Shown one piece after another: positions 9,926 to 49,494 of a DNA stretch of 64,000 nt. The DNA is from Dendrobates tinctorius (Eukaryota). The stretch lies in NCBI RefSeq assembly GCF_039654945.1, contig NW_027361819.1:2790001-2854000 (forward strand). The letters are read 5' to 3'. Position numbers and translations under genes: made by a program. Below the pieces are notes generated by a model. It was given only the letters and a program-made list of their open reading frames with translations. It was not told where the DNA came from and did not search any database. Each line of letters opens with the position of its first letter. Positions within the stretch are counted from its first letter, which is position 1.

Positions 9926-12206
<2,281 letters not shown>

Positions 12207-30272: not shown

Positions 30273-31541
30273 GACTGCAGCTCTGGAGGATAAGACACAA
30301 TGTAACAGCAGAATAGTGAGTGCAGCTCTGGAGGATAAGACACAATGTAACAGCAGAATACTGAGTGCAGCTCTGGAGGTGACTGCAGGATAAGACAATG
30401 TAACAGCAGAATAGTGAGTGCAGCTCTGGAGGATAAGACACAATGTAACAGCAGAATACTGAGTGCAGCTCTGGAGGTGACTGCAGGATAAGACAATGTA
30501 ACAGCAGAATAGTGAGTGCAGCTCTGGAGGATAAGACACAATGTAACAGCAGAATACTGAGTGCAGCTCTGGAGGTGACTGCAGGATAAGACAATGTAAC
30601 AGCAGAATAGTGAGTGCAGCTCTGGAGGATAAGACACAATGTAACAGCAGAATACTGAGTGCAGCTCTGGAGGTGACTGCAGGATAAGACAATGTAACAG
30701 CAGAATAGTGAGTGCAGCTTTGGAGGATAAGACACAATGTAACAGCAGAATACTGAGTGCAGCTCTGGAGGTGACTGGAGCATGACACAATGTAACAGCA
30801 GAATACTGAGTGCAGCTCTGGAGGTGACTGGAGCATGACACAATGTAACAGCAGAATACTGAGTGCAGCTCTGGAGGTGACTGGAGGATAAGACAGGATG
30901 TAACAGCAGAATAGTGAGGGCAGCTCTGGAGGTGACTGGAGGATACGACACGATGTAACAGCAGAATAGTGACTGCAGCTCTGGAGGTGACTGGAGGATA
31001 AGACACAATGTAACAGCAGAATGGTGACTGGAGGATAAGACACAATGTAACAGCAGAATAGTGAGTGCAGCTCTGGAGGTGACTGCAGGATAAGACAATG
31101 TAACAGCAGAAGAGTGAGTGCAGCTCTGGAGGTGACTGGAGCATGACACGATGTAACAGCAGAATACTGAGTGCAGCTCTGGAGGTGACTGGAGGATAAG
31201 ACAGGATGTAACAGCAGAATAGTGAGTGCAGCTCTGGAGGTGACTGGAGGGTAAAACAGTGTAACCGCAGAATAGTGAGGGCATCACTGGAGGATAAGAC
31301 ACCATGTAACAGCAGAATAGTGACTGCAGCTCTGGAGGTGACTGGAGGATAAGACACAATGTAACAGCAGAATGGTGACTGGAGGATAAGACACAATGTA
31401 ACAGCAGAATAGTGAGTGCAGCTCAGCAGGTGACTGGAGGATAAGACAACGTAACAGCAGAATAGTGAGTGCAGCTCTGGAGGATAAGACACAATGTAAC
31501 AGCAGAATGGTGAGTGCAGCTCAGCATGTGACTGGAGGATA
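30273..31541. repeat. Composite 35-57 bp minisatellite (Tx1 target array, left part)
   Basis: Units built from TGGAGGATAAGACACAATGTAACAGCAGAATAGTGAGTGCAGCTCTGGAGGTGAC. Confidence 0.95.
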
Positions 31542-31789
31542 GAGCACGCCCAGGAAGAGGAGGAGCATCTGTGCTGAGCGTCTGCAGGCTAGGGCCTTGC
31601 TAAGCTCCTGGGAAGGGAGGATTTTTCCTGCAAGGACTTTCCATCTGCCCCCTTCCCAGGAAAGAGGACTTTCCCTGGGACTGAGCGCCGGGGCTGTGCC
31701 CCTGGCTCCCATCCCCCGGCAAGCCAGCTGGGGGTGGGGGGCCTCAGCACCATCCGGAGGCCAGGGTGCAGCCAGCCAGTCCCAGGGAG

Positions 31790-34700
31790 ATGGGGAAGAG
31801 ACGGAGCCAGGAGAGAGGGGGTCGCAGGACCCAGGAGCCCCGGGACACCGGGCCCCCCGAAGCTGGTACCGTGGCGGCTCCTCCTCCCGGAGGAGTGGCG
31901 GCCCAGAGCAGAGGTGCAGTGGCAGAGCCCCCCAACATCTGGGGCTCCAGAGCTGAGGGAGAGCCATCTACCATCTACGCCTCCTGCATCCATGCGCACC
32001 TCTGCGAATATGAGGAGGCCGCCAAACAGCTGAGAAAACTCCGGGAGGAGTTAAGGGGAGCACGAGCGGTGGCTAAGAACCGGCTCCCCGCCTCGAGACG
32101 AGCTGAGGTCTCCGCCACGGTGGAGAGGCTGAAGGGGGCTATCAGGGCCTTGGAGGAGATACGGGCGGCTATCCTGAGTGGGAGCGGCCCCTTCGCAGAG
32201 AAACTGAAAAACGATGACCGGTTTAGAGCCATGACCGGAGGGTCTCCTGGGGGGTCGGGAGGCCCCTGCCAGGTGGAGGGCCAAGAGGAGGAGGAGGAGG
32301 ATGGCGGAACATCTACGCCTGCCCCACCTGAAGGCCTGGTGAGCAGCGACACCCAGGTAACATGCAGCGGGGTGGCCCCTGAGCAAGTGGCTCTCCCACC
32401 GGACTCCAGTTACTCGGAGGAAAGTGGGGGCGAGGGGGAGGCTGGTGGGAGTGGGGACAGTAGTAGTGAGGGGGGCTGCCTCGTCCTACAGCAGGTGAGG
32501 CGGATCGAGTCCCCAGAGCGGTTTGGCACACTGCTCTTTGGGGATGAGGTCTGCCCTGAGGACGAGGCAACCGGAAAGAGGAAAAAGAAAAAAAACAAGC
32601 GCAAGCCAAAAAACACCGTGGCTGACAAACTTATGTTTGTCCCTCTTTCCGGGGCCCCTCTGTCCCGCTGTATGGAACCCGCTGCCCACCCCGGCTCGGG
32701 CCCTGTGGTGGGTCCGCAGCGGGGGCGCGGGCAGAGTGATGTGTGCCTGGGCCTTACCGTCACATCTGGTGGTGGCGGTGAGGGTTCAGGCAGCGACATG
32801 GAGGTCGGTGCTGGTGCCAGTGGTGTAACAGCCGCTGGCGGTATTGGCAGTAGTGGTGTCCGGGCTCAGTCCCCGGTGGCAGGGGGGGCTGGCCTGGCGC
32901 TCAGCACGGGTACAGCCAGGACCGCACCTCCGGCGGTGAGTGCTGGGGTCTCTGGATCCCCCACGCACGGGTCCGTTAAGTCTGGTCCACTTATGGGGGT
33001 CCAGAGACCTAGAAAGGGCGTGGAGGCTGCTGTGAAGCAGCAGCTAAAAAAATGCAAGGGGCTGGTAGCTCCTCTGACGGCGCCCGTGGCAAGAGCGGGG
33101 TCCCCGGCGCGTAGACCCAAAAAGGGGTCCGTGCTGGGGGCACCGCCGCCGCTGGGCGACGAGGGGGAGTGGCCAGCCCTGCCAACATCAAGTGGTGGGT
33201 TCAGGGGCGCAGTGACAGTCCGTGAGGGGGGCGTGGCCTCCCCGAGTGTTGCCCAGCCTGCAAAGGCTGCGGCATGCGGGGGGGGCGTGTCCTCCTCGGC
33301 CGCTGTCCCGCCTGCTGTGCCCGCGTCACCTGGGGAGGGCGTGGCCTCGCAAGGGGTCACTGCTCTGCCCGGGGTGGCTGCGGCCGGCGGGGGGGGCGTG
33401 GCCTTGGCGGGCCCACTGCCTCCTGTCCCGCCTACCCCCTCAAGCAGCATAGTGCCCCCAAAAGTCGGTAGGGAGTTGTCGGGGTCCCCAGCCCGCTTAC
33501 CTCCATCTGGTGGTGCGGGGGCTCTGGCGCTCCTTGGGAAGCCGGCGGGGGCGAACAGCAGAGGGCAGGGTGCGGTGGCAGTGGCCGTCCCTGTCCTCAG
33601 TGCAAAGACACCGCAAAAAGAAAAAAAAGTGGAGCCAGAGAACCCAGGAGCTGCTGCTGCTCCCAGGCTCGGGCAGGGCGTACTGAGTGCGCTCTGCTCG
33701 GAGGTATTTAAAGGGGCAGCGGCACTCCTGGACAAGAGTTGGAGCAGTGCCAGCAGCTCCAAGGAGCAGAGCACTGGCCAGTCAGGGCCCCCAGCAGGCA
33801 GACAGGGGTACTGCAACACCAAGTCTGCTAATGTAAATAGTGGTCTATCTGGAAGTGAGAGTGGGAGTGAGATAGGAGATATTTTTGAAGAGCTGTTTGA
33901 GGACATAAATGGTGATGTGAGCGATATGGATGAGGGAGTGAGTGCGAGTGTGAATGTGGCAGTAAATGCTGGAGTGAGTGCCGGAGCGAGTGGAAATAAT
34001 AAAAGAGTGAACGGGAGAGTGAATGAGGGTGCTGGCACAAGTGGTGGTAGTGGTGGGAGGGCTGGCCCGTCTGCCCCCCCAGCCGCGAGGCCCCAACGTA
34101 ATTATGCGGGGGTCGCGGCTGGGGGTCGGGGTGGTTCCGGGGGGGTCTCCTCGCCTCCGGGCTCCGGGGACGGCGGTTTGCACCGCCGTTTCCTGGAGGC
34201 CCTCCAAAGGGGAGAAAGATCGATCATGGTAGAGGGGAGGACAGTGGACCTGTCTTTCTGGATAGAGAGACATGGCCTAGCAGCCTTCCAAAATCAAAGG
34301 GAGGGAGGGACTGTTTGGTCTCTCCCCACAGCCGGGCAGGGGCCGCCAAGAAGGAATGTGGTCCGTCTTAGGTGGGGGGGCAGTGAAGCTTGTCCACCTA
34401 GGAGCAAGGTGGTGGAGCTCCTACTTAAGATGGGCTTCGGGGCGAATGACATCTTTGCCCTGATACACCCTTCGGCGTCCCGCTTCTTCGACGTCAGCTT
34501 CGTGCGGCCAGAGGGGCTTGAGCTCTTCTGGTCAAACTACGAGCTGGTGCGAGAAGAGCCCGGATGGCGAGACTTCGTGGCTCAAGCGGTGTCTCGCCAA
34601 AATTCCGTCAAGCGAGTGACCGTGGTTACATGTAACGAGTCACTCGCAGGCGTGGACATCATGACGTGGCTTTCCCGTTACGGGGAGGTCACCGAGGTCC

Positions 34701-35812
34701 CAAAAAAGAACAGGGACGAGTTTGGCATCTGGTCGGGGGGCTGGACCTTCATGGTCAAATTGAAGGTTTCCGGCGGCACGGTCACCCACATCCCTTCCTC
34801 GGCGTTCCTGGGAAGGGACAGGATCCTGGTCTTCTTCCAGGGGCAACCGAAGGTCTGCCACAAGTGCGGCGACCCCACTCACTTCAGCGCCAACTGCAAG
34901 GTGCAGAAGTGCGCGTTGTGTGGTGGGGTAGGTCACCTGGCTGCCTTGTGCAAAGACATTCGGTGCCACCTGTGTGGTGACCTGGGTCACCCTCTCAGCC
35001 GCTGCCCTCGCTCTTTCTCTAATGCCGCCACAGGCCCGGTGGGGGGAGACCGCGGGGGGGCAACCCCCGGTGGCGCTGCTTCTGCTGTGGCAGGTGGTGG
35101 CGAAGGGGGAAGGGCTGAGGGGCCAGTGAGGAAGGGCAATGCTGCAAGGGGCCCCGCGTACCAGCGGAGGCAGGAAAAACGCCAGGGAGGTAAGGGACAG
35201 GTGGAGCCTCGGGCAACCGGGGTGATGCCTGCTCCTCCCTCCAGGCCCGTGGCCAAAGCCTCTGAGGCCCTGGGGGAGAGTGCGGTGAGTGAGGAGATCA
35301 GGAGGATGGAGAGAGAGGAGAAAGCGGCTGACTCGGACAATTCCTCTCAGTATGAAAGTGTTGATGAGGATGTCCAAGAGCAGCCTACAGCACCAGGTGG
35401 CAAAACCAGGCGTGCCAAGCGCAAAGCGGTGGGGAGGAAGGCTGACAAGCCTTCAAAGTCCCCCCCGCCCCCGACCACAAGGGTGCATACGGAAGGGCCC
35501 GCTGACCCCCCTCTGATCAGACTCTCCAACCGGTTCAGCGCCCTCGGGGGTTCAGATGATGAACCGCAAGACGAGGGTACTGGGCCGGGGGTAACACCGG
35601 AGGGTCCTTCGGGGGATGGCGGAGTCTGTCCCTCAGGGGGCATTGCTCCTCCTGAGGGGGGGACAGACCTGGAACCCGGGGGCGAGGACACCAGGGGGGG
35701 TGGGATGGACACGTCGGGAGCTTCCCTGAAAAGGAAGGTGTCTGACCCCTCCCCAGGAGGAGGTAATAGCGGGGTAGGGAAGAAATTGGCCATCCAACTC
35801 GATCACCCATGA
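31790..35812 (+). CDS. Tx1-like ORF1p (1340 aa from the first ATG): coiled coil, long low-complexity spacer, RRM-like region, three CCHC knuckles
   Basis: Open frame. Knuckles CHKCGDPTHFSANC, CALCGGVGHLAALC, CHLCGDLGHPLSRC; basic NLS-like KRKKKKNKRKPK. Confidence 0.9.
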   Translation: MGKRRSQERGGRRTQEPRDTGPPEAGTVAAPPPGGVAAQSRGAVAEPPNIWGSRAEGEPSTIYASCIHAHLCEYEEAAKQLRKLREELRGARAVAKNRLPASRRAEVSATVERLKGAIRALEEIRAAILSGSGPFAEKLKNDDRFRAMTGGSPGGSGGPCQVEGQEEEEEDGGTSTPAPPEGLVSSDTQVTCSGVAPEQVALPPDSSYSEESGGEGEAGGSGDSSSEGGCLVLQQVRRIESPERFGTLLFGDEVCPEDEATGKRKKKKNKRKPKNTVADKLMFVPLSGAPLSRCMEPAAHPGSGPVVGPQRGRGQSDVCLGLTVTSGGGGEGSGSDMEVGAGASGVTAAGGIGSSGVRAQSPVAGGAGLALSTGTARTAPPAVSAGVSGSPTHGSVKSGPLMGVQRPRKGVEAAVKQQLKKCKGLVAPLTAPVARAGSPARRPKKGSVLGAPPPLGDEGEWPALPTSSGGFRGAVTVREGGVASPSVAQPAKAAACGGGVSSSAAVPPAVPASPGEGVASQGVTALPGVAAAGGGGVALAGPLPPVPPTPSSSIVPPKVGRELSGSPARLPPSGGAGALALLGKPAGANSRGQGAVAVAVPVLSAKTPQKEKKVEPENPGAAAAPRLGQGVLSALCSEVFKGAAALLDKSWSSASSSKEQSTGQSGPPAGRQGYCNTKSANVNSGLSGSESGSEIGDIFEELFEDINGDVSDMDEGVSASVNVAVNAGVSAGASGNNKRVNGRVNEGAGTSGGSGGRAGPSAPPAARPQRNYAGVAAGGRGGSGGVSSPPGSGDGGLHRRFLEALQRGERSIMVEGRTVDLSFWIERHGLAAFQNQREGGTVWSLPTAGQGPPRRNVVRLRWGGSEACPPRSKVVELLLKMGFGANDIFALIHPSASRFFDVSFVRPEGLELFWSNYELVREEPGWRDFVAQAVSRQNSVKRVTVVTCNESLAGVDIMTWLSRYGEVTEVPKKNRDEFGIWSGGWTFMVKLKVSGGTVTHIPSSAFLGRDRILVFFQGQPKVCHKCGDPTHFSANCKVQKCALCGGVGHLAALCKDIRCHLCGDLGHPLSRCPRSFSNAATGPVGGDRGGATPGGAASAVAGGGEGGRAEGPVRKGNAARGPAYQRRQEKRQGGKGQVEPRATGVMPAPPSRPVAKASEALGESAVSEEIRRMEREEKAADSDNSSQYESVDEDVQEQPTAPGGKTRRAKRKAVGRKADKPSKSPPPPTTRVHTEGPADPPLIRLSNRFSALGGSDDEPQDEGTGPGVTPEGPSGDGGVCPSGGIAPPEGGTDLEPGGEDTRGGGMDTSGASLKRKVSDPSPGGGNSGVGKKLAIQLDHP

Positions 35813-38800
35813 TGGCTGAACTCGCCCCGTTGACGCTGGCGTCTATTAATGTCGCCAGCATTAAGTCAGATGCGGCTCGCTTCACGGCCTTTGATTTTTT
35901 CTCCCGGATTGAGGCAGAAATTTTATTCTTGCAAGAGACCAGACTAACAGACATGGGGGCCATCTATAAAGCACGGAGGGAGTGGAGGTGCGGGCCCTCA
36001 TACTGGTCTCTTGCGGCCGAGCCGTATAGCGGGGTGGCAGTCCTTTTTAAGACTGCAGCAGTTGAATGCCGACGGGTTACTGAGTTGGAAATGGGGAGGT
36101 GCCTGATCCTAGATGTCTTCATGAGGGGACAAGAGCTCCGGCTCATCAACATCTACGGCCCGCAGTCCAAGTGGGACCGCAAATGTCTCTTCCTGAGGAT
36201 CAAGCCCTTTCTTTTTACGAGCCGACAGGTGGTCTTCGGTGGGGACTTCAACACCATTACGAGGTCCCGTGACCGGGGGGGTCCCGGAGATCGCCTGGCT
36301 TATGATAGCGTCGCGTTGAATAGCATAGCCAGTGAAGCTCGCCTGGTGGATGCCCACATCCGGCACACCCCAGGTCACGGAGGTTTCACCTACCATAGGG
36401 GTAGCTGTAGGTCTAGAATAGACAGGTTTTTTTTGAAGGAGGACGCCATCTTTTCTGCTGTGTCCGCCGTTGAGGTGGAGTTCTCCGATCACTGTCTAAT
36501 TTTCTTTTCTCTGAATGTTGCAGAGACTCCTCGGATGGGAAGAGGGCTGTGGAAGCTCAATTCGTCCCTGCTGGAAGAAGCGGAGGTGAGACAATCCTTC
36601 GAGGATTTTCTTCAGAGCCAGGTACCGCTGTTGGATCTCTGTAGTAGTAAGTCAGAGTGGTGGGAGATCTTCAAAAAGCGGGTGGCGGGGTTCTTCCGTC
36701 AGCTCTCGAGCCTCAGGAGTCTGAACAGGCACCGCTTGTACCAGGCTCTGGGGAGGAAACTCGAGCAGCTTGTCTCGACTGGAGGTGACCGAGAGGAAAT
36801 CTCCAGAGTGAAATCTTTGCTCAAGAGGTGTCAGTATGATAGGCACACATCTTTGGTTTTTGAGAGGGACTTCGGGAAGTACCGCTCGCCCGACCCTTAC
36901 AGAAACTGTAAGATGTCAGTGAATTGTAAGATGGTGACAGGACTGATCGACAGTACGGGGTCCCTGAACAGATCCAAATCAGGGATCCTGGAGGTGGTCA
37001 GATCCTTCTACTCACACCTCTTGGAAAAGAAGGATCTGGATCGGGACAGGATGTCGGCTTTCCTGGCTGAAGCCATCCCTGAGCCAGGGGGTGACCCCTC
37101 TCTTGGTGTTTTGGCAGAAGAAATCAGGGAAGAGGAAGTGAGACTGGCCATTGATGGGCTTCGGCTCAAGAAATCGCCAGGTCCGGATGGCTTAACATCT
37201 GAGTTCTATAAGACTTTTAGGGACTCCTTGGTCCCCCTCTTGACAGGGGTCTTTAATGAGTGTCTCTCCTCGGGCACTCTTCCCGGCTCAATGAGGAAGT
37301 CAGCCCTCATTATTCTGTCAAAGGGTAAGGATCCGTCCCGAATCGAGAACTGGCGTCCCATAGCGCTTCTCGATACGGACCGGAAGGTTCTGGCCAAGGT
37401 GCTGTTTAATCGGCTGGTGAAGTTTGCACCCCGGCTCCTTTCAGGGGCCCAGCATTGCTCTGTTCCAGGCCGCAGTACTTTTAGTGCTGTGCTCGGTGTC
37501 CGAGAGGCAGTGGAGCAGGGTAGGGCAGGTCACTGGAAGGGGTACTTGCTGTCATTAGATCAAGCGAAAGCCTTTGACCGGGTCAACCACGAGTACCTCT
37601 GGTCCGTCCTTTTGAGGTATGGTCTGCCTGGGAGGTTTGTAAAATGGTTAGAGATCTTGTACCAAGGGGCTGAGACTTTTCCGCTGGTGAATGGTTGGTC
37701 AGGTCGTCCTTTTGAGGTGGGTTCTGGGGTCCGTCAGGGCTGTCCGCTGAGCCCGCTTTTATACGTGTTCGCGATCGATCCCTTCTTAAGGAGGGTAGAT
37801 CGTGGACCGTTGGCGGGAGTCGGGATGGACCGGGCGGGCTCTGGCTCCTCTCTGAGGGTGGTGGCGTACGCCGATGATGTTTCCCTGTTCGTATCCTCGA
37901 GAGGGGAGGCGGACTGGGTCATGTCGGAGGTAGTGCGCTACTCGGAGGCATCCGGGTCCATGATCAACCGGGATAAGTGTGAAAGTCTCTGGCTGGGAGG
38001 GGGAGATCCTAGTTTTGATCTCCCGGACACCCTTCCAGGGCCCCAGGCCACCGCCAAAATTCTAGGCATCGAATTTGGCCCCGGGGACTACCCCCAGCAA
38101 AATTGGGAGGGCAGACTTAAGATCGCCGCCCAAAAGGTGGACCAATGGAAGGGTTGGTCTTTAACCCTGAGGGAAAGGGTTGCCCTGGCTAAAGGCTATC
38201 TGCTACCTTTATTGATATACCTGGGCAGTGTGTGCATCTTGCCGGAACCTCTCTGGACGCGGGTCTATAGCCTGTTCTTCCAATTGTTATGGGGGAATAG
38301 GCTTAACCTAATCAAGAGGGAGGTTACATACCGTACGAGGAGACTAGGCGGGTTGGGTATGGTCAACCCGGTGGTGTTTCTAGTAAACACCTTTCTTAAG
38401 ACTAACATCTCTAACCTCTGGCTAGAGAGGGCTCCTCCGTGGGTAGTCTCCTGCAAGGGTTGGCTTTGGCCTTTCTTCCAGGAATGGGAGACAGGAGGGC
38501 GGGTGAAGGACCTACGCACACCTCATGGGCATCTTCCGGCTTACGCTACCCCGGTTCTGAAGGTGATCCGCCGGTGGGGTCTGGGAATGTGGGAAATCAG
38601 GACCATGTCGAGGCAGTGCCTTGACAGGAGGGTCCTGTTGACCCATTTCCAGAAGCCCCTGGCCCTTAAGGATTGCCCAGGCCGGGATCTGGAGGTCGGG
38701 CTGGGGCTTTTAAATTCTAAGCGGATCCCCATGAAGTTTTGGGACTTGACCTGGCGTTGCTTCCACGGGAGGCTGTATGTAAGGGACAACTTGAAGTGCA

Positions 38801-39201
38801 GGAACTCCGATGACCGGGGTTGCCCTCGTGAGGAGTGTGGCGACGTGCTGGAAAGCATGGAGCACTTCCTGCTTCATTGTCCCTTTAATGCAGAGGTTTA
38901 CAACAGGGTGGGTGCCTCCATACGTTGGCCGCGGCTGGCGTCCCTCTCCTACACTGAATGGGCCTATGGAGCGTTCAGATCCCTGGGTGGCCGGGACCCG
39001 TGCACTTTATTCCTAGTCAGTGCAGCGGTTAGGTTCCACACTTGGAATGCACGGTGCCTAGTTACGACGCGGAAAAAAACCCTCCCAAGGGATGAGGTGG
39101 TAGGAAACATCTTGGGTGACCTGGTGAAGGTCCGTTCTTTGGAGTTCGAAAGGTTGGGTGTGAGGAAGGCCTCTTGGCTTTGGAGAGGCCTCTCCTTTTA
39201 A
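35809..39201 (+). CDS. Tx1-like ORF2p (1130 aa): AP endonuclease, reverse transcriptase, C-terminal Zn finger
   Basis: Endonuclease motifs SINV, FLQET, NIYGP, GGDFN, SRIDRF, SDH. RT motifs KSPGPDG, WRPIAL, DQAKAFD, GVRQGCPLSP, YADD. C-terminal CPREECGDVLESMEHFLLHC. Confidence 0.97.
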   Translation: MMAELAPLTLASINVASIKSDAARFTAFDFFSRIEAEILFLQETRLTDMGAIYKARREWRCGPSYWSLAAEPYSGVAVLFKTAAVECRRVTELEMGRCLILDVFMRGQELRLINIYGPQSKWDRKCLFLRIKPFLFTSRQVVFGGDFNTITRSRDRGGPGDRLAYDSVALNSIASEARLVDAHIRHTPGHGGFTYHRGSCRSRIDRFFLKEDAIFSAVSAVEVEFSDHCLIFFSLNVAETPRMGRGLWKLNSSLLEEAEVRQSFEDFLQSQVPLLDLCSSKSEWWEIFKKRVAGFFRQLSSLRSLNRHRLYQALGRKLEQLVSTGGDREEISRVKSLLKRCQYDRHTSLVFERDFGKYRSPDPYRNCKMSVNCKMVTGLIDSTGSLNRSKSGILEVVRSFYSHLLEKKDLDRDRMSAFLAEAIPEPGGDPSLGVLAEEIREEEVRLAIDGLRLKKSPGPDGLTSEFYKTFRDSLVPLLTGVFNECLSSGTLPGSMRKSALIILSKGKDPSRIENWRPIALLDTDRKVLAKVLFNRLVKFAPRLLSGAQHCSVPGRSTFSAVLGVREAVEQGRAGHWKGYLLSLDQAKAFDRVNHEYLWSVLLRYGLPGRFVKWLEILYQGAETFPLVNGWSGRPFEVGSGVRQGCPLSPLLYVFAIDPFLRRVDRGPLAGVGMDRAGSGSSLRVVAYADDVSLFVSSRGEADWVMSEVVRYSEASGSMINRDKCESLWLGGGDPSFDLPDTLPGPQATAKILGIEFGPGDYPQQNWEGRLKIAAQKVDQWKGWSLTLRERVALAKGYLLPLLIYLGSVCILPEPLWTRVYSLFFQLLWGNRLNLIKREVTYRTRRLGGLGMVNPVVFLVNTFLKTNISNLWLERAPPWVVSCKGWLWPFFQEWETGGRVKDLRTPHGHLPAYATPVLKVIRRWGLGMWEIRTMSRQCLDRRVLLTHFQKPLALKDCPGRDLEVGLGLLNSKRIPMKFWDLTWRCFHGRLYVRDNLKCRNSDDRGCPREECGDVLESMEHFLLHCPFNAEVYNRVGASIRWPRLASLSYTEWAYGAFRSLGGRDPCTLFLVSAAVRFHTWNARCLVTTRKKTLPRDEVVGNILGDLVKVRSLEFERLGVRKASWLWRGLSF

Positions 39202-39994: not shown

Positions 39995-40032
<38 letters not shown>

Positions 40033-40435: not shown

Positions 40436-40591
40436 TGGAGGATAAGACACAATGTAACAGCAGAATGGTGACTGGAGGATAAGACACAATGTAACAGCAG
40501 AATGGTGAGTGCAGCTCAGCATGTGACTGGAGGATAATATACGATGTCGCAGCAGAATAGTGACCGCTGCTCTGGAGGTGACTGGAGGATA
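40436..40591. repeat. Minisatellite spacer (about 3 units) between the two retrotransposons
   Basis: Same TGGAGGATAAGACACAATGTAACAGCAGAAT family, including one divergent unit (AATATACGATGTCGCAGC...) not present left of copy 1. Confidence 0.92.
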
Positions 40592-40839
40592 GAGCACGCC
40601 CAGGAAGAGGAGGAGCATCTGTGCTGAGCGTCTGCAGGCTAGGGCCTTGCTAAGCTCCTGGGAAGGGAGGATTTTTCCTGCAAGGACTTTCCATCTGCCC
40701 CCTTCCCAGGAAAGAGGACTTTCCCTGAGACTGAGCGCCGGGGCTGTTCCCCTGGCTCCCACCCTCCGGCAAGCCAGCTGGGGGTGGGGGGCCTCAGCAC
40801 CATCCGGAGGCCAGGGTGCAGCCAGCCAGTCCCAGGGAG

Positions 40840-43800
40840 ATGGGGAAGAGACGGAGCCAGGAGAGAGGGGGTCGCAGGACCCAGGAGCCCCGGGACACCG
40901 GGCCCCCCGAAGCTGGTACCGTGGCGGCTCCTCCTCCCGGAGGAGTGGCGGCCCAGAGCAGAGGTGCAGTGGCAGAGCCCCCCAACATCTGGGGCTCCAG
41001 AGCTGAGGGAGAGCCGTCTACCATCTACGCCTCCCGCATCCATGCGCACCTCTGCGAATATGAGGAGGCCGACAAACAGCTGAGAAAACTCCGGGAGGAG
41101 TTAAGGGGAGCACGAGCGGTGGCTAAGAACCGGCTCCCCGCCTCGAGACGAGCTGAGGTCTCCGCCACGGTGGAGAGGCTGAAGGGGGCTATCAGGGCCT
41201 TGGAGGAGATACGGGCGGCTATCCTGAGTGGGAGCGGCCCCTTTGCAGAGAAACTGAAAAACGATGACCGGTTTAGAGCCATGACCGGAGGGTCTCCTGG
41301 GGGGTCGGGAGGCCCCTGCCAGGTGGAGGGCCAAGAGGAGGAGGAGGAGGATGGCGGAACATCTACGCCTGCCCCACCTGAAGGCCTGGTGAGCAACAAC
41401 ACCCAGGTAACAAGCAGCGGGGTGGCCCCTGAGCAAGTGGCTCTCCCACCGGACTCCAGTTACTCGGAGGAAAGTGGGGGCGAGGGGGAGGCTGGTGGAA
41501 GTGGGGACAGTAGTAGTGAGGGGGGCTGCCTCGTCCTACAACAGGTGAGGCGGATCGAGTCCCCAGAGCGGTTTGGCACACTGCTCTTTGGGGATGAGGT
41601 CTGCCCTGAGGACGAGGCAACCGGAAAGAGGAAAAAGAAAAAAAACAAGCGCAAGCCAAAAAACACCGTGGCTGACAAACTTATGTTTGTCCCTCTTTCC
41701 GGGGCCCCTCTGTCCCGCTGTATGGAACCCGCTGCCCACCCCGGCTCGGGCCCTGTGGTGGGTCCGCAGCGGGGGCGCGGGCAGAGTGATGTGTGCCTGG
41801 ACCTTACCGTCACATCTGGTGGTGGCGGTGAGGGTTCAGGCAGCGACATGGAGGTCGGTGCTGGTGCCAGTGGTGTAACAGCCGCTGGCGGTATTGGCGG
41901 TAGTGGTGTCCGGGCTCAGTCCCCGGTGGCAGGGGGGGCTGGCCTGGCGCTCAGCACGGGTACAGCCAGGACCGCACCTCCGGCGGTGAGTGCTGGGGTC
42001 TCTGGATCCCCCACGCACGGGTCCGTTAAGTCTGGTCCACTTATGGGGGTCCAGAGACCTAGAAAGGGCGTGGAGGCTGCTGTGAAGCAGCAGCTAAAAA
42101 AATGCAAGGGGCTGGTAGCTCCTCTGACGGCGCCCGTGGCAAGAGCGGGGTCCCCGGCGCGTAGACCCAAAAAGGGGTCCGTGCTGGGGGCACCGCGGGG
42201 GAGTGGCCAGCCCTGCCAACATCAAGTGGTGGGTTCAGGGGCGCAGTGACGGTCCGTGAGGGGGGCGTGGCCTCCCCGAGTGTTGCCCGGCCTGCAAAGG
42301 CTGCGGCATGCGGGGGGGCGTGTCCTCCTCGGCCGCTGTCCCGCCCGCTGTGCCCGCGTCACCTGGGGAGGGCGTGGCCTCGCAAGGGGTCACTGCTCTG
42401 CCCGGGGTGGCTGCAGCCGGCGGGGGGGGGTGTGGCCTTGGCGGGCCCACTGCCTCCTGTCCCGCCTACCCCCTCAAGCAGCATAGTGCCCCCAAAAGTC
42501 GGTAGGGAGTTGTCGGGGTCCCCAGCCCGCTTACCTCCATCTGGTGGTGCGGGGGCTCTGGCGCTCCTTGGGAAGCCAGCGGGGGCGAACAGCAGAGGGC
42601 AGGGTGCGGTGGCAGTGGCTGTCCCTGTCCTCAGTGCAAAGACACCGCAAAAAGAAAAAAAAGTGGAGCCAGAGAACCCAGGAGCTGCTGCTGCTCCCAG
42701 GCTCGGGCAGGGCGTACTGAGTGCGCTCTGCTCGGAGGTATTTAAAGGGGCAGCGGCACTCCTGGACAAGAGTTGGAGCAGTGCCAGCAGCTCCAAGGAG
42801 CAGAGCACTGGCCAGTCAGGGCCCCCAGCAGGCAGGCAGGGGTACTGCAACACCAAGTCTGCTAATGTAAATAGTGGTCTATCTGGAAGTGAGAGTGGGA
42901 GTGAGATAGGAGATATTTTTGAAGAGCTGTTTGAGGACATAAATGGTGATGTGAGCGATATGGATGCTGGAGTGAGTGCGAGTGTGAATGTGGCAGTAAA
43001 TGCTGGAGTGAGTGCCGGAGCGAGTGGAAATAATAAAAGAGTGAACGGGAGAATGAATGAGGGTGCTGGCACAAGTGGTGGTAGTGGTGGGAGGGCTGGC
43101 CCGTCTGCCCCCCCAGCCGCGAGGCCCCAACGTAATTATGCGGGGGTCGCGGCTGGGGGTCGGGGTGGTTCCGGGGGGGGGTCTCCTCGCCTCCGGGCTC
43201 CGGGGACGGCGGTTTGCACCGCCGTTTCCTGGAGGCCCTCCAAAGGGGAGAAAGATCGATCATGGTAGAGGGGAGGACAGTGGACCTGTCTTTCTGGATA
43301 GAGAGACATGGCCTAGCAGCCTTCCAAAATCAAAGGGAGGGAGGGACTGTTTAGTCTCTCCCCACAGCCGGGCAGGGGCCGCCAAGAAGGAATGTGGTCC
43401 GTCTTAGGTGGGGGGGCAGTGAAGCTTGTCCACCTAGGAGCAAGGTGGTGGAGCTCCTCCTTAAGATGGGCTTCGGGGCGAATGACATCTTTGCCCTGAT
43501 ACACCCTTCGGCGTCCCGCTTCTTCGACGTCAGCTTCGTGCGGCCAGAGGGGCTTGAGCTCTTCTGGTCAAACTACGAGCTGGTGCGAGAAGAGCCCGGA
43601 TGGCGAGACTTCGTGGCTCAAGCGGTGTCTCGCCAAAATTCCGTCAAGCGAGTGACCGTGGTTACATGTAACGAGTCACTCGCAGGCGTGGACATCATGA
43701 CGTGGCTTTCCCGTTACGGGGAGGTCACCGAGGTCCCAAAAAAGAACAGGGACGAGTTTGGCATCTGGTCGGGGGGCTGGACCTTCATGGTCAAATTGAA

Positions 43801-44848
43801 GGTTTCCGGCGGCACGGTCACCCACATCCCTTCCTCGGCGTTCCTGGGAAGGGACAGGATCCTGGTCTTCTACCAGGGGCAACCGAAGGTCTGCCACAAG
43901 TGCGGCGACCCCACTCACTTCAGCGCCAACTGCAAGGTGCAGAAGTGCGCGTTGTGTGGTGGGGTAGGTCACCTGGCTGCCTTGTGCAAAGACATTCGGT
44001 GCCACCTGTGTGGTGACCTGGGTCACCCTCTCAGCCGCTGCCCTCGCTCTTTCTCTAATGCCGCCACAGGCACGGTGGGGGGAGACCGCGGGGGGGCAAC
44101 CCCCGGTGGCGCTGCTTCTGCTGTGGCAGGTGGTGGCGAAGGGGGAAGGGCTGAGGGGCCAGTGAGGAAGGGCAATGCTGCAAGGGGCCCCGCGTACCAG
44201 CGGAGGCAGGAAAAGCGCCAGGGAGGTAAGGGACAGGTGGAGCCTCGGGCAACCGGGGTGATGCCTGCTCCTCCCTCCAGGCCCGTGGCCAAAGCCTCTG
44301 AGGCCCTGGGGGAGAGTGCGGTGAGTGAGGAGATCAGGAGGATGGAGAGAGAGGAGAAAGCGGCTGACTCGGACAATTCCTCTCAGTATGAAAGTGTTGA
44401 TGAGGATGTCCAAGAGCAGCCTACAGCACCAGGTGGCAAAACCAGGCGTGCCAAGCGCAAAGCGGTGGGGAGGAAGGCTGACAAGCCTTCAAAGTCCCCC
44501 CCGCCCCCGACCACAAGGGTGCATACGGAAGGGCCCGCTGACCCCCCTCTGATCAGACTCTCCAACCGGTTCAGCGCCCTCGGGGGTTCAGATGATGAAC
44601 CGCAAGACGAGGGTACTGGGCCGGGGGCAACACCGGAGGGTCCTTCAGGGGATGGCGGAGTCCGTTCCGCAGGGGGCATTGCTCCTCCTGAGGGGGGGAC
44701 AGACCTGGAACCCGGGGGCGAGGACACCGGGGGGGGTGGGATGGACACGTCGGGAGCTTCCCTGAAAAGGAAGGTGTCTGACCCCTCCCCAGGAGGAGGT
44801 AATAGCGGGGTAGGGAAGAAATTGGCCATCCAACTCGATCACCCATGA
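40840..44848 (+). pseudogene. Disrupted ORF1 of copy 2
   Basis: Relative to copy 1: 16-nt deletion near 42196, G-run indels (-1, +1, +2), and TGG>TAG at 43352-43354. Confidence 0.9.
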
Positions 44849-47800
44849 TGGCTGAACTCGCCCCGTTGACGCTGGCGTCTATTAATGTCGCCAGCATTAA
44901 GTCAGATGCGGCTCGCTTCACGGCCTTTGATTTTTTCTCCCGGATTGAGGCAGAAATTTTATTCTTGCAAGAGACCAGACTAACAGACATGGGGGCCATC
45001 TATAAAGCACGGAGGGAGTGGAGGTGCGGGCCCTCATACTGGTCTCTTGCGGCCGAGCCGTATAGCGGGGTGGCAGTCCTTTTTAAGACTGCAGCAGTTG
45101 AATGCCGACGGGTTACTGAGTTGGAAATGGGGAGGTGCCTGATCCTAGATGTCTTCATGAGGGGACAAGAGCTCCGGCTCATCAACATCTACGGCCCGCA
45201 GTCCAAGTGGGACCGCAAATGTCTCTTCCTGAGGATCAAGCCCTTTCTTTTTACGAGCCGGCAGGTGGTCTTCGGTGGGGACTTCAACACCATTACGAGG
45301 TCCCGTGACCGGGGGGGTCCCGGAGATCGCCTGGCTTATGATAGCGTCGCGTTGAATAGCATAGCCAGTGAAGCTCGCCTGGTGGATGTCCACATCCGGC
45401 ACACCCCAGGTCACGGGGGTTTCACCTACCATAGGGGTAGCAGTAGGTCTAGAATAGACAGGTTTTTTTTGAAGGAGGACGCCATCTTTTCTGCTGTGTC
45501 CGCCGTTGAGGTGGAGTTCTCCGATCACTGTCTAATTTTCTTTTCTCTGAATGTTGCAGAGACTCCTCGGATGGGAAGAGGGCTGTGGAAGCTCAATTCG
45601 TCCCTGCTGGAAGAAGCGGAGGTGAGACAATCCTTCGAGGATTTTCTTCAGAGCCAGGTACCGCTGTTGGATCTCTGTAGTAGTAAGTCAGAGTGGTGGG
45701 AGATCTTCAAAAAGCGGGTGGCGGGGTTCTTCCGTCAGCTCTCGAGCCTCAGGAGTCTGAACAGGCACCGCTTGTACCAGGCCCTGGGGAGGAAACTCGA
45801 GCAGCTTGTCTCGACTGGAGGTGACCGAGAGGAAATCTCCAGAGTGAAATCTTTGCTCAAGAGGTGTCAGTATGATAGACACACATCTTTGGTTTTTGAG
45901 AGGGACTTCGGGAAGTACCGCTCGCCCAACCCTTACAGAAACTGTAAGATGTCAGTGAATTGTAAGATGGTGACAGGACTGATCGACAGTACGGGGTCCC
46001 TGAACAGATCCAAATCAGGGATCCTGGAGGTGGTCAGATCCTTCTACTCACACCTCTTGGAAAAGAAGGATCTGGATCAGGATAGGATGTCGGCTTTCCT
46101 GGCTGAAGCCATCCCTGAGCCAGGGGGTGACCCCTCTCTTGGTGTTTTGGCAGAAGAAATCAGGGAAGAGGAAGTGAGACTGGCCATTGATGGGCTTCGG
46201 CTCAAGAAATCGCCAGGTCCGGATGGCTTAACATCTGAGTTCTATAAGACTTTTAGGGACTCCTTGGTCCCCCTCTTGACAGGGGTCTTTAATGAGTGTC
46301 TCTCCTCGGGCACTCTTCCCGGCTCAATGAGGAAGTCAGCCCTCATTATTCTGTCAAAGGGTAAGGATCCGTCCCGAATCGAGAACTGGCGTCCCATAGC
46401 GCTTCTCGATACAGACCGGAAGGTTCTGGCCAAGGTGCTGTTTAATCGGCTGGTGAAGTTTGCACCCCGGCTCCTTTCAGGGGCCCAGCATTGCTCTGTT
46501 CCAGGCCGCAGTACTTTTAGTGCTGTGCTCGGTGTCCGAGAGGCAGTGGAGCAGGGTAGGGCAGGTCACTGGAAGGGGTACTTGCTGTCATTAGATCAAG
46601 CGAAAGCCTTTGACCGGGTCAACCACGAGTACCTCTGATCCGTCCTTTTGAGGTATGGTCTGCCTGGGAGGTTTGTAAAATGGTTAGAGATCTTGTACCA
46701 AGGGGCTGAGACTTTTCCGCTGGTTAACGGTTGGTCAGGTCGTCCTTTTGAGGTGGGTTCTGGGGTCCGTCAGGGCTGTCCGCTGAGCCCGCTTTTATAC
46801 GTGTTCGCGATCGATCCCTTCTTAAGGAGGGTAGATCGTGGACCGTTGGCGGGAGTCGGGATGGACCGGGCGGGCTCTGGCTCCTCTCTGAGGGTGGTGG
46901 CGTACGCCGATGATGTTTCCCTGTTCGTATCTTCGAGAGGGGAGGCGGACTGGGTCATGTCGGAGGTAGTGCGCTACTCGGAGGCATCCGGGTCCATGAT
47001 CAACCGGGATAAGTGTGAAAGTCTCTGGCTGGGAGGGGGAGATCCTAGTTTTGATCTCCCGGACACCCTTCCAGGGCCCCAGGCCACCGCCAAAATTCTA
47101 GGCATCGAATTTGGCCCCGGGGACTACCCCCAGCAAAATTGGGAGGGCAGACTTAAGATCGCCGCCCAAAAGGTGGACCAATGGAAGGGTTGGTCTTTAA
47201 CCCTGAGGGAAAGGGTTGCCCTGGCTAAAGGCTATCTGCTACCTTTATTGATATACCTGGGCAGTGTGTGCATCTTGCCGGAACCTCTCTGGACGCGGGT
47301 CTATAGCCTGTTCTTCCAATTGTTATGGGGGAATAGGCTTAACCTAATCAAGAGGGAGGTTACATACCGTACGAGGAGACTAGGCGGGTTGGGTATGGTC
47401 AACCCGGTGGTGTTTCTAGTAAACACCTTTCTTAAGACTAACATCTCCAACCTCTGGCTAGAGAGGGCTCCTCCGTGGGTAGTCTCCTGCAAGGGTTGGC
47501 TTTGGCCTTTCTTCCAGGAATGGGAGACAGGAGGGCGGGTGAAGGACCTACGCACACCTCATGGGCATCTCCCGGCTTATGCTACCCCGGTTCTGAAGGT
47601 GATCCGCCGGTGGGGTCTGGGAATGTGGGAAATCAGGACCATGTCGAGGCAGTGACAGGAGGGTCCTGTTGACCCATTTCCAGAAGCCCCTGGCCCTTAA
47701 GGATTGCCCAGGCCGGGATCTGGAGGTCGGGCTGGGGCTTTTAAATTCTAAGCGGATCCCCATGAAGTTTTGGGACTTGACCTGGCGTTGCTTCCACGGG

Positions 47801-48232
47801 AGGCTGTATGTAAGGGACAACTTGAAGTGCAGGAACTCCGATGACCGGGGTTGCCCTCGTGAGGAGTGTGGCGACGTGCTGGAAAGCATGGAGCACTTCC
47901 TGCTTCATTGTCCCTTTAATGCAGAGGTTTACAACAGGGTGGGTGCCTCCATACGTTGGCCGCGGCTGGCGTCCCTCTCCTACGCTGAATGGGCCTATGG
48001 AGCGTTCAGATCCCTGGGTGGCCGGGACCCGTGCACTTTATTCCTAGTCAGTGCAGCGGTTAGGTTCCACACTTGGAATGCACGGTGCCTAGTTTCGACG
48101 CGGAAAAAAACCCTCCCAAGGGATGAGGTGGTAGGAAACATCTTGGGTGACCTGGTGAAGGTCCGTTCTTTGGAGTTCGAAAGGTTGGGTGTGAGGAAGG
48201 CCTCTTGGCTTTGGAGAGGCCTCTCCTTTTAA
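44845..48232 (+). pseudogene. Disrupted ORF2 of copy 2
   Basis: TGG>TGA at 46636-46638 within the RT domain; 5-nt deletion and frameshift near 47653. Confidence 0.92.
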
Positions 48233-49441
48233 AAACGCACTCAAGGGAGAGCTAGCTCCGTGCGAATGAGGGTAGGGATAGCATAAGTTTCACTGGGTGT
48301 GTTAGGGACAGAAGTAGAGGCAGATAGGGACAGGGAGGGACAGGCACTGAGGGACAGATAGAGAGTTAGTTATGATAAGTTAGGTAGAGTAGGGGCAGGT
48401 AGGGGCAGATAGGGACAGGTTTCTTTTTTAGGGACAGAAGTAGGGACAGTCTTAGTTCTTGAGGGATAGGATGAATGTGTTAGTGAGGGATGGAGCCTCT
48501 AGAACCCCTTTTTCCTGGTGGTGGGCTGGTGCATGCCACCTTAGCTTTTTTGTTTTAAAAACAGGACATATAATGGATATTGGGCTTACAGGTGCCAAAC
48601 TTGGGCCTTGGGTATGCAAATGCTGTGTTTAGTTTGTATATTAATGCGTAAGTAGATGGGATGGTATTGAGAGTTTTGGAAAATGTCTTTTGGTTGTGCT
48701 TTGGTAAAAGGAAAAACATATAACACACGTTTTTTTGTTTTTTTTTAGTTAGAATGTGTGGATGGGGTGTAGTCAGGTTGGGAGGGGGGTGCATGGGGGG
48801 TGGTGGATGGATGACCGGATGCCAAGAGCAACATAAAGGAGCAGGGCAGGAGAAGTAGACTCTGCGGACCCTGGAAATAGTTTTCGTGTGGAATCAAAAG
48901 GCCATAAACTTTTGTGGACCAGATTTTGCAGTGACAAGGCTACAAACTTGTAGGACCTGCGGTGCAAGGTGGTGGGAAAAAAGGCTGCGAACTTGTTGCC
49001 ATGTGTGGGAGAGGGAAAAAAAAAAAAAAAAAAATCTTTGCTGTGTAATAGGAGGTAAGGTTTGTCGGCCAAAGTGGCAGAGTTCTTGTTTTTTTTCAAG
49101 GCGGAGGGCCAGGAAAGGGTTATTTTCGTTTGGTTTTTGTAAATAGTAAAATTGTAAATAGTAAACTAGTAAAATCGGTGAGGTGTGAATGGGGGTGAAT
49201 GGGGGTGAATGGAGTGAGAGTGGGGAGTGGGGTTTATGTTTCTTTGTATTCTCTTTTCAGTGGATTCCTGCTGGGGGACCCTAAGCTGCCGAGCTCAGTG
49301 GGGGACAAGGAAAGGATTTGGACTTTCAGTTGTTTGCGCATGTTTTGCACATTTTATGTCTGTCTATGTTGGTTTTCTTTAGTTTATGTATTGTGGTTTG
49401 TTTCTGAGTGTAATTTTGATAATTTTGTAAAATAAAAGAGT

Positions 49442-49494
49442 TGGAGGATAAGACACAATGTAACAGCAGAATAGTGAGTGCAGCTCTGGAGGTG
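49442..49494. repeat. Final unit of the Tx1 target minisatellite
   Basis: TGGAGGATAAGACACAATGTAACAGCAGAATAGTGAGTGCAGCTCTGGAGGTG, followed by unique sequence. Confidence 0.9.

What the first reader, a model, noticed from the sequence alone, without database searches (positions are those of the whole stretch)
31533..49450. Tx1-group retrotransposon that appears to target one exact position in a minisatellite unit
Seen: two full-length elements of about 8.9 kb lie 156 bp apart in the same orientation within one minisatellite array. Both have 5' junction GTGAC-TGGAGGATA|GAGCACGCCC and 3' junction AATAAAAGAGT|TGGAGGATA-AGACACAATGTAAC, so the duplicated 9-mer and the register in the unit are identical. 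The units next to the junctions differ between copies (5' flank GCTCAGCATGTGAC vs GCTCTGGAGGTGAC; 3' flank GAATGGTGACTGG vs GAATAGTGAGTGC), which favours two independent insertions over a tandem duplication. Known: Tx1-group APE endonucleases are often sequence-specific, with targets including Xenopus Tx1D/Tx2D elements, U2 snRNA, tRNA spacers, 5S rDNA and simple repeats. Inference: this family uses an abundant dispersed minisatellite as a renewable landing pad, which also draws it into gene introns. I do not know of a described family with this target. Copy 1 is intact, so the family may be active.
Basis: partly seen in the sequence, partly recalled or inferred. Interest (0 to 1): 0.9.

Follow-up and report, generated by a model that had tools for sequence, protein, structure and literature searches.

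The report
Frog LINE that targets a minisatellite
Two full-length copies of an L1/Tx1-type jumping gene sit at exactly the same base of a 55-bp repeat unit in a poison-frog genome, and its relatives in four other frog species behave the same way, so this is a real site-specific retrotransposon family of a known kind with a target not described in the papers I could search.

Summary
Copy 1 (31542-40435, 8894 bp, both ORFs open) and copy 2 (40592-49441, 8850 bp, broken) are 98.65% identical. They lie 156 bp apart, and each is bracketed by TGGAGGATA in the same register of a 55/37-bp minisatellite.

Three within-window tests favour two separate insertions over a duplication:
- The flanking units do not fit an unequal crossover.
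- All seven disabling lesions are in copy 2.
- Differences between the copies are enriched for synonymous changes (p=0.007).

In public read sets of the same species, contigs at the family's full depth run through the 3' end into TGGAG or further.

Sister families (76-84% nt identity in ORF2, one well-supported clade) are site-specific in other hyloid frogs:
- 4 of 4 copies on four Anomaloglossus chromosomes, and 2 of 2 in Engystomops, sit at one base of the related 86-bp minisatellite.
- 3 of 3 in Pristimantis sit at one base of a 79-bp minisatellite.
- Others sit at one site in 18S rDNA.

The kind is known: Tx1-clade elements are famously target-specific, and satellites are already listed among their targets. 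This is therefore a new member of a known kind. The less expected point is that targets switch between near-identical elements. Other first-stage notes in this scan flagged similar Tx1/minisatellite cases elsewhere in this genome.

The parts
30283..31541 (+). Upstream part of the target minisatellite (55-, 37-, 43- and 98-bp unit variants, unit core ...GTGAC TGGAGGATA AGACACAATGTAACAGCAGAATAGTGAGTGCAGCTCTGGAG)
   Evidence: TRF rows; unit list after removing both elements in silico
31533..31541 (+). Target-site duplication TGGAGGATA, 5' side of copy 1
31542..40435 (+). Copy 1, full length (8894 bp), both ORFs open
31542..31789 (+). 5' UTR of copy 1. It starts GAGCACGCCCAGGAAGAGGAGGAGC; the GGAAGAGGnGGnGC motif is shared with the 18S-targeting relatives.
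31790..35812 (+). ORF1, 1340 aa: long low-complexity N-terminal part, two ZCCHC3-type RNA-binding domains (aa 855-1016) and three CCHC knuckles (type I ORF1p)
   Evidence: Pfam PF23057 7e-19, PF23058 7e-20, PF00098; translation
35809..39201 (+). ORF2, 1130 aa: APE endonuclease (aa 12-228), reverse transcriptase (512-755, YADD present), zf-RVT (970-1030). Its ATG overlaps the ORF1 stop (ATGA).
   Evidence: Pfam; L1 ORF2p in PDB at E 1e-67
39202..40435 (+). 3' UTR with an internal A34 run (39995-40028) and a 407-bp tail module. AATAAA lies at 40425-40430, five bases before the end, and there is no terminal poly(A).
40436..40591 (+). Spacer of three minisatellite units (37+55+55 bp plus the 9-mer). 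Its first and last 9 bp are the TSD copies of copy 1 (3') and copy 2 (5').
40592..49441 (+). Copy 2, full length (8850 bp) but degenerate: five frameshifting indels and two premature stops relative to the frames of copy 1
49442..49494 (+). TSD copy (49442-49450) and the last, partial minisatellite unit; the array ends here
57878..60381 (+). Related 86-bp minisatellite (29 units, homologous site TGGAGTATAATACAGG), unoccupied here. It is the target of the sister family in Anomaloglossus and Engystomops.

Best explanation
This is a site-specific non-LTR retrotransposon family of the L1/Tx1 type that inserts by target-primed reverse transcription at one position of a dispersed minisatellite. From the junctions I infer two nicks. 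The endonuclease nicks the bottom strand opposite GTGAC^TGGAGG, and the freed 3' OH primes cDNA synthesis at the element's conserved 3' end (...AATAAAAGAGT). A second nick on the top strand 9 nt downstream (GGATA^AGACAC) gives the TGGAGGATA duplication. The two copies in the window are separate insertions of different age into neighbouring units of one array. The element belongs to a clade of hyloid-frog elements that are all site-specific but use different tandem targets: 55-, 86-, 79- and 59-bp minisatellites and 18S rDNA. Shown: the junctions, the domains, and the repeated same-base insertions in relatives. Inferred: the nick positions, the order of events and the determinant of specificity.
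For: - Identical junctions and a 9-bp TSD at both copies.
- Domains: APE, RT and zf-RVT in ORF2; RNA-binding domains plus CCHC knuckles in ORF1. The EN catalytic motifs and YADD are present.
- Not a duplication, line 1: the unit 5' of copy 2 (ATATACGATGTCGC...GACCGCTGCTC) differs from the unit 5' of copy 1, and removing both elements restores a coherent array.
- Line 2: five frameshifts and two stops, all in copy 2.
- Line 3: of the differences I could polarise against family contigs, about 9 are private to copy 1 and about 18 to copy 2.
- Line 4: 26 of 52 coding differences are synonymous against 16.9 expected (p=0.007). Part of the divergence therefore arose under selection in active lineages.
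- Family level: in two DNA runs the contig covering the last 144-188 bp of the element has the same depth as the element body (521 and 472 versus 380-495) and continues into TGGAG. Contigs from two other studies continue to TGGAGGATAAGAC (then 829 nt unlike this locus) and to TGGAGGATAAGACACAATGTAACAG.
- Relatives: four Anomaloglossus copies on four chromosomes all read GCAGCTCTG|...AAAAGAT(C/G)|TACAGGAGG in arrays of different length.
- Two Engystomops copies use the same 3' site. Three Pristimantis copies read AAAGAGT|TCCATACACTG.
- The 18S site GGTAAT|TCCAGCTCC is used in two species.
- All these elements form one clade with 100% support.
- The 3' terminus ...TTTTAT-AATAAAAGAGT is conserved and similarity stops exactly there.
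Against: - Only two copies of this exact family could be read directly. The genome-wide flank census was not possible with the tools.
- The DNA contigs branch after TGGAG. The flank is therefore uniform for only five bases at full depth, and copy number could not be calibrated.
- The 5' junction was not resolved in the read sets.
- The asymmetry in substitutions alone is not significant (9 versus 18, p=0.12).
- No biochemical evidence for the nick sites exists.
Confidence: 0.85

Rival explanations
1. One insertion followed by recombination inside the array. Unequal crossing-over or ectopic gene conversion between misaligned units copied the element into a neighbouring unit. This keeps register and 'TSD' automatically, without any endonuclease specificity.
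For: Frog minisatellite-rich subtelomeres are highly recombinogenic and expand by unequal crossing-over (PMC10794172). The two copies share about five variants against the family majority (39037, 40296, 40721, 41019, 41722). A 64-bp stretch 5' of copy 1 recurs inside the spacer.
Against: A simple crossover requires the 5' flank of copy 2 to equal that of copy 1, or the spacer to be downstream flank plus upstream flank; neither holds. All seven disabling lesions are in copy 2 (1/128 under equal decay). The excess of synonymous differences (p=0.007) is not expected for two dead copies drifting apart. This rival also cannot explain the same-base insertions of sister families on different chromosomes.
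Confidence: 0.1
2. Targeting is guided mainly by the RNA, not by the endonuclease. Because AATAAA lies 5 nt before the element's end, transcripts would end in the downstream flank. That flank tag would pair with the nicked target and fix the insertion point, while the nick itself needs only a short motif (T-N-S-A-G-like).
For: There is no poly(A) at any junction, and AATAAA lies 5 nt from the end in all families. Pristimantis elements with 94% identical EN-coding sequence sit in 18S rDNA or in the 79-bp minisatellite, and both flanks start with TCCA. EN is no more diverged than RT between families with different targets. Contigs from runs guessed to be RNA run past the 3' end into the flank.
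Against: The type of those runs is not on record. No conserved 3' structure or pairing was found. In studied site-specific APE-type LINEs the endonuclease is the main determinant (Takahashi and Fujiwara 2002, as cited in PMC4494074). A few changes in EN loops could also retarget; variable patches lie at aa 41-60 and about 150-200.
Confidence: 0.25
3. There is no sequence specificity. The element prefers, or only survives in, minisatellite-rich subtelomeric chromatin, and the shared register is chance.
For: The window is almost wall-to-wall minisatellites, so any insertion here is likely to hit one.
Against: The same base and orientation occur in 2/2 copies here, and in 4/4, 2/2 and 3/3 copies of sister families. 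In the window, 29 units of the related 86-bp array and more than 20 other arrays are unoccupied.
Confidence: 0.03
4. The flanking minisatellite units are part of the mobile unit and travel with it.
For: Read-through transcripts could carry a short piece of downstream flank.
Against: The arrays flanking the copies vary from 57 bp to 4 kb and carry different unit variants. Similarity between families ends exactly at AAAGAGT.
Confidence: 0.02

Closest known systems
Tx1L of Xenopus laevis (founder of the Tx1 clade)
   Same: An APE-type LINE of the L1 superclade with a CCHC-bearing ORF1 that inserts at one specific sequence in a repeated host element (Tx1D, a piggyBac-type transposon; PMC4494074). 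It occurs in anurans.
   Different: The target here is a free-standing minisatellite, not a DNA transposon. The TSD is 9 bp. ORF2 has about 45-58% identity to the nearest Xenopus proteins found. Direct comparison with the Tx1L sequence was not possible.
Kibi and Koshi (Tx1 clade, teleosts) and the crocodilian (TTCC)n/(TTTC)n Tx1 families
   Same: Tx1-clade elements that use tandem repeats as a renewable landing pad (PMC4494074).
   Different: Their targets are 2-4-bp microsatellites, where register is trivial. Here one base in a 55-86-bp unit is chosen.
Tx1 families with satellite targets in Repbase ('Sat' in Fig. 3 of Kojima 2015, PMC4494074)
   Same: The same concept: a Tx1-clade element specific for a satellite.
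   Different: Which families and which satellites could not be read (figure not held, no supplements). Identity with the present lineage is unknown.
TRAS1/SART1 (telomeric repeats) and R1/R7 (rDNA), R1 clade, insects
   Same: APE-type LINEs that cut a defined base of a tandem unit. Precise 3' junctions are helped by read-through target sequence. SART1 also uses overlapping stop/start codons between its ORFs (own knowledge).
   Different: A different clade (R1, not L1/Tx1), a different ORF1 type and different hosts.
Keno (U2 snRNA), Mutsu (5S rDNA) and Tx1-Mar (Mariner-N4)
   Same: Tx1-clade members whose close relatives switch between unrelated multicopy targets (PMC4494074).
   Different: Their targets are genes or transposons. 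The switch seen here (18S rDNA versus minisatellite at about 94% ORF2 identity) is between much closer relatives.

Membership tests
Non-LTR retrotransposon, L1 superclade | ORF2 with an N-terminal APE-type endonuclease followed by a reverse transcriptase, closest to L1 ORF2p | tested here: met
   Pfam PF03372 1e-14 and PF00078 2e-31. PDB L1 ORF2p at E 1e-67 over aa 7-865, against 1e-22 for R2.
Tx1 clade (L1-Tx1) | RT phylogeny groups the element with Tx1L and Repbase Tx1 references rather than with vertebrate L1 | not testable with these tools
   No Repbase or Dfam library was available. No hit carried a Tx1 name. The nearest named relatives are unannotated Xenopus, Pelobates and hyloid RT proteins.
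Tx1 clade (L1-Tx1) | Type I ORF1p (RRM-like domains plus CCHC knuckles) instead of the Transposase_22 ORF1p of vertebrate L1 | tested here: met
   PF23057, PF23058 and zf-CCHC match and there is no Transposase_22 hit. [quoted passage not shown]
Tx1 clade (L1-Tx1) | C-terminal cysteine-rich (zf-RVT) domain in ORF2 | tested here: met
   PF13966 at 6.5e-07, aa 970-1030.
Target-specific LINE (Kojima's criterion: one sequence type in more than 20% of flanks) | The same flanking sequence at most copies of the family | tested here: inconclusive
   This family: 2/2 copies, plus family-depth contigs that enter TGGAG and beyond; a full census was not possible. Sister families meet the criterion: 4/4, 2/2 and 3/3.
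Target-specific LINE | Endonuclease cleaves the target sequence specifically | not testable with these tools
   This needs a nicking assay. Nick positions are inferred from the junctions only.

The most novel reading that the evidence does not exclude
Target choice in this clade is largely programmed by a flank-derived 3' tag on the RNA (polyadenylation signal 5 nt from the element's end). An element that lands by accident in a new tandem repeat would then re-aim its progeny at that repeat. This would explain why elements with about 94% identical endonuclease coding sequence sit in 18S rDNA or in a 79-bp minisatellite. It would also explain how one frog clade has colonised at least five different tandem targets. 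It would amount to a naturally re-programmable, RNA-guided LINE.
Probability: 0.2. Interest if true: 0.8.

Novelty: new member of a known kind. Interest (0 to 1): 0.5.

Why it matters
The result adds a well-documented vertebrate case of a LINE that picks one base in a long minisatellite unit, with intact copies in at least two species. It also places that family in a compact clade whose members have moved between 18S rDNA and several unrelated minisatellites while changing little in protein sequence. Such a set of natural near-isogenic elements with different targets is useful for working out what determines target choice in APE-type LINEs: endonuclease loops, the C-terminal domain, or an RNA flank tag. 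It also helps explain how frog subtelomeric minisatellites and transposons shape each other. For annotation, minisatellite arrays in hyloid genomes are predictable nests of full-length, possibly active LINEs.

Tried and rejected
- Exact-protein look-up of a 78-aa ORF at the element's 3' end, to fish out other junction contigs: nothing on record.
- Scan of JGI metagenome contigs for the last 24 bases: no match.
- Findings search by sequence: blank.
- ORF2 relatives L001-L003 end before the 3' junction. The Bufo gargarizans hit had no retrievable DNA.
- Search for a Tx1 name among hits, cluster members and Atlas clusters: none.
- Conserved 3' stem-loop across seven families: none predicted.
- The idea that EN is the most diverged domain between families with different targets: not so. 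EN is 76-82% identical, RT 75-86%, and the C-terminal 170 aa are the most diverged at 68-77%.
- Possible 18S relic at the 5' end of the window element (GAGCACGCCCA versus CAGCAGCCGCGG): the resemblance is too weak to claim.
- Expression: runs guessed to be RNA hold 85-89% of the words, but none is on record as RNA, so transcription is not shown.
- Copy number: it could not be calibrated. Single-locus contigs at depth 2-9 against 450-520 for the element suggest tens to more than 100 copies, but this is a rough inference.
- The 5' junction of the Pristimantis 79-bp family lies in an assembly gap (N run in L010), which I left as it is.
Full report
**1. Observation**

The window holds two head-to-tail elements: copy 1 at 31542-40435 (8894 bp) and copy 2 at 40592-49441 (8850 bp).
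- They are 98.65% identical (69 substitutions, 10 indels), and nothing else in the window resembles them.
- Both 5' junctions read GTGAC TGGAGGATA|GAGCACGCCC. Both 3' junctions read AATAAAAGAGT|TGGAGGATA AGACACAATGTAAC.
- The 9-mer cannot be extended on either side, so it is a clean 9-bp target-site duplication.
- The host sequence is a minisatellite with units of 55, 37, 43 and 98 bp. It runs 30283-31541, continues in the 156-bp spacer and ends about 50 bp after copy 2.
- Two random hits in the array would share register and orientation about once in 100.

**2. Anatomy**

- Copy 1 has a 248-bp 5' UTR.
- ORF1 encodes 1340 aa: a long low-complexity N-terminal part, two ZCCHC3-type RNA-binding domains and three CCHC knuckles.
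- ORF2 encodes 1130 aa: APE endonuclease, reverse transcriptase with YADD, and zf-RVT. Its ATG overlaps the ORF1 stop (ATGA).
- ORF2 matches L1 ORF2p structures at E 1e-67, far better than R2.
- The 1234-bp 3' UTR contains an internal A34 run, followed by a 407-bp tail that ends ...AATAAAAGAGT. The AATAAA hexamer lies five bases from the end and there is no terminal poly(A).
- Copy 2 carries five frameshifting indels and two premature stops relative to copy 1.

**3. Two insertions or one duplicated?**

Frog minisatellite regions recombine often (PMC10794172), so duplication is a serious rival. Four results argue against it.

(a) Flank logic. Removing both elements and one 9-mer each gives a coherent array...[55a] * [37][55a][55b] ** [last unit], where * is the copy 1 site and ** the copy 2 site. 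Copy 1 follows unit 55a (…GCTCAGCATGTGAC). Copy 2 follows a different unit, 55b (…ATATACGATGTCGC…GACCGCTGCTCTGGAGGTGAC). An unequal crossover would give both copies the same 5' unit, or a spacer made of downstream flank plus upstream flank. Neither is seen.

(b) Disabling lesions. All seven are in copy 2 and none in copy 1. The chance is 1/128 if both had decayed for the same time.

(c) Polarised differences. I polarised differences against the majority letter of family contigs laid on 39000-42000. About 9 changes are private to copy 1 and about 18 to copy 2. An 8-bp deletion and a 1-bp insertion in the 3' UTR are also private to copy 2. The substitutions alone give p=0.12. With the indels included, p is about 0.009.

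(d) Synonymous excess. Of 52 coding differences, 26 are synonymous, against 16.9 expected from the sequence and the observed mutation classes (p=0.007). Part of the divergence therefore accrued under purifying selection, that is, in replicating lineages before insertion.

The two copies do share about five variants against the family majority, so they come from related source elements. I put independent insertion at about 0.85.

**4. The family in read sets of the same species**

Thirty runs from seven studies of the same organism hold the element. Follow-up notes on other pieces of this genome call it a poison frog. Four runs were laid on 39000-42000.
- In the two DNA runs, the contig covering the last 144-188 bp of the element has depth 521 and 472. 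The element body has 380-495. The contig continues five bases into the flank (TGGAG) before it branches.
- A contig from another study continues to TGGAGGATAAGAC and then for 829 nt unlike this locus. It is therefore neither copy 1 nor copy 2 as assembled here.
- A contig from a further study continues through TGGAGGATAAGACACAATGTAACAG at the full depth of the element in that run.
- Random flanks would break the contig at the last base of the element.
- The conserved terminus AAAGAGT in sister families, whose flanks are independently known (18S rRNA), shows that TGGAG is flank and not element.
- The minisatellite words are about 25 times deeper than the element, so target sites are abundant.
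- The 5' junction was not resolved. Copy number could only be guessed at tens to more than 100.

**5. Relatives**

ORF2 searches found 76-84% nt identical elements in annotated hyloid genomes.

| Species and loci | Target | Junctions |
|---|---|---|
| Anomaloglossus baeobatrachus, four full-length copies (98-99% alike) on four chromosomes | 86/81-bp minisatellite; flanking arrays from under 200 bp to 4 kb with different unit variants | ...ATAGTGAGTGCAGCTCTG\|CTCAGCTGC... and ...AATAAAAGAT(C/G)\|TACAGGAGGTAAC |
| Engystomops pustulosus, two copies (89% nt to the Anomaloglossus family) | Same 3' site in a 100-bp variant of that repeat | ...AAAAGATT\|TACAGGATGTAAC |
| Pristimantis euphronides, three copies | 79-bp minisatellite | AAAAAGAGT\|TCCATACACTGTACAC |
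| Eleutherodactylus coqui, one copy | 59-bp repeat | — |
| Anomaloglossus, two copies, probably one insertion amplified with its rDNA unit | 18S rDNA | GGTAAT\|TCCAGCTCC |
| Pristimantis, two tandem copies | 18S rDNA, same site | GGTAAT\|TCCAGCTCC |

- The 86-bp repeat is the one at window 57878-60381. The 55-bp unit is a derivative of it. The window target GAC-TGGAGGATAA-GACA corresponds to CTC-TGGAGTATAA-TACA.
- The Anomaloglossus family sits within the same 10-bp core, but there 8 bp (GAGTATAA) are lost instead of 9 bp duplicated.
- All these elements form one clade with 100% support, separate from the Xenopus relatives.
- Site specificity is thus a property of the whole clade, and the 86-bp target has been kept in two frog families.

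**6. Mechanism**

The junctions fix the geometry.
- First-strand priming is at the bottom-strand nick opposite GTGAC^TGGAGG.
- Second-strand cleavage is 9 nt downstream, at GGATA^AGAC.
- The conserved A/U-rich terminus (…TTTTAT-AATAAAAGAGT) is the only conserved 3' feature, and no conserved stem was found.

What sets the specificity is open.
- EN is not the most diverged domain. EN is 76-82% identical between families with different targets, and the C-terminal 170 aa are 68-77% identical.
- The Pristimantis 18S and 79-bp elements are about 94% identical through the EN coding part. Their flanks both begin with TCCA.
- Either a few EN or C-terminal changes retarget the element, or a flank-derived RNA tag helps to aim it. 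The position of AATAAA predicts that transcripts end in the downstream flank.
- I rate the second mechanism as a main determinant at about 0.2-0.25.

**7. Comparison with what is known**

- Tx1-clade elements are the classic APE-type sequence-specific LINEs of vertebrates. Tx1L targets Tx1D, Keno targets U2, and Kibi and Koshi target microsatellites. The crocodilian families target Mariner-N4, LTR elements, Harbinger or microsatellites.
- The legend of Fig. 3 in Kojima 2015 already lists satellites among known targets (PMC4494074).
- The type I ORF1p seen here is stated to be consistent with the Tx1 clade (PMC5203782).
- Membership by RT phylogeny with Repbase references could not be tested. 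No hit carried a Tx1 name.
- I found no paper describing this lineage, its minisatellite targets or a Tx1-type 18S rDNA element in frogs. Repbase reports are not searchable here.

**8. Verdict**

- It is a new member, in fact a small clade, of a known kind. It is not a new mechanism.
- The most interesting by-product is the very recent target switching within the clade.
- Other first-stage notes in this scan (s1-389112, s1-389121, s1-376915, s1-376912, s1-366833, s1-377154) report Tx1-like elements in 35-, 36-, 62- and 81/86-bp minisatellites elsewhere in this genome. I did not test those loci, but they fit the picture.

Noticed in passing
L005:4000-12130, L015:3900-12140 (Anomaloglossus); L013:2560-2640 and 10470-10540 (Pristimantis): Sister families are inserted at one site of 18S rDNA, in the conserved GTGCCAGCAGCCGCGGTAAT|TCCAGCTCC region. 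I found no paper describing an 18S-specific L1/Tx1-type element in vertebrates. L005 and L015 share odd 18S variants and flanking repeats, so they are probably one insertion amplified with its rDNA unit.
   Followed up: partly
L013:2590-2640 and 10490-10540: Head-to-tail elements are joined by only about 30 nt: TCCAGCTCCAAG (18S downstream of the site) followed by TGGTGCCAGCAGCC (18S upstream of the site). This is the reverse of their order in 18S. Tandem arrays of the element with minimal target remnants resemble the tandem pair in the window.
   Followed up: no
L010 vs L013 (Pristimantis), ORF2: Elements in the 79-bp minisatellite and in 18S rDNA are 90-96% identical along ORF2, including the endonuclease part (94.4%). 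Both 3' flanks start with TCCA.
   Followed up: partly
L007:12541, 13990, 14858, 20375: A different retroelement (1046-aa ORF with a weak RT match, ends ...GGGTTGAGATTACATGTTAGTCCC) lies in the same 86-bp arrays. It abuts TAATGTATGTA at each junction, in both orientations. A second mobile element may prefer this minisatellite.
   Followed up: partly
window 35806-35812; L004, L008, L002 at the ORF1/ORF2 boundary: The ORF1 stop and the ORF2 start overlap (ATGA) in several families of the clade. The layout suggests termination-reinitiation coupling, as described for SART1 (own knowledge).
   Followed up: no
window 39995-40028 (A34), 49015-49034 in copy 2; L005:11858-11894 (A37); L004:11823-11836: An internal poly(A) run about 250-440 bp before the true 3' end is kept across the clade (an A/T-rich stretch in L006). 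It looks as if a tail module was added behind an ancestral poly(A) tail.
   Followed up: no
window 1-64000: The window is almost entirely minisatellite arrays: more than 25 different units of 16-112 bp, many GC-rich. This is typical of the extended recombinogenic subtelomeres described for frogs.
   Followed up: no
L014 (Engystomops) vs L004 (Anomaloglossus): ORF2 is 89% nt identical, and the proteins share a 90% cluster, between frogs of different families. The two also share the same target site. This indicates either slow evolution of an old site-specific lineage or horizontal transfer.
   Followed up: no
L007:5218-6420: One Anomaloglossus copy carries a 1.2-kb insertion inside ORF1.
   Followed up: no
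L008 and L006: These copies lie inside the annotated ranges of host genes (a gene with an EPO_TPO domain; a gene with RA and SARAH domains).
   Followed up: no
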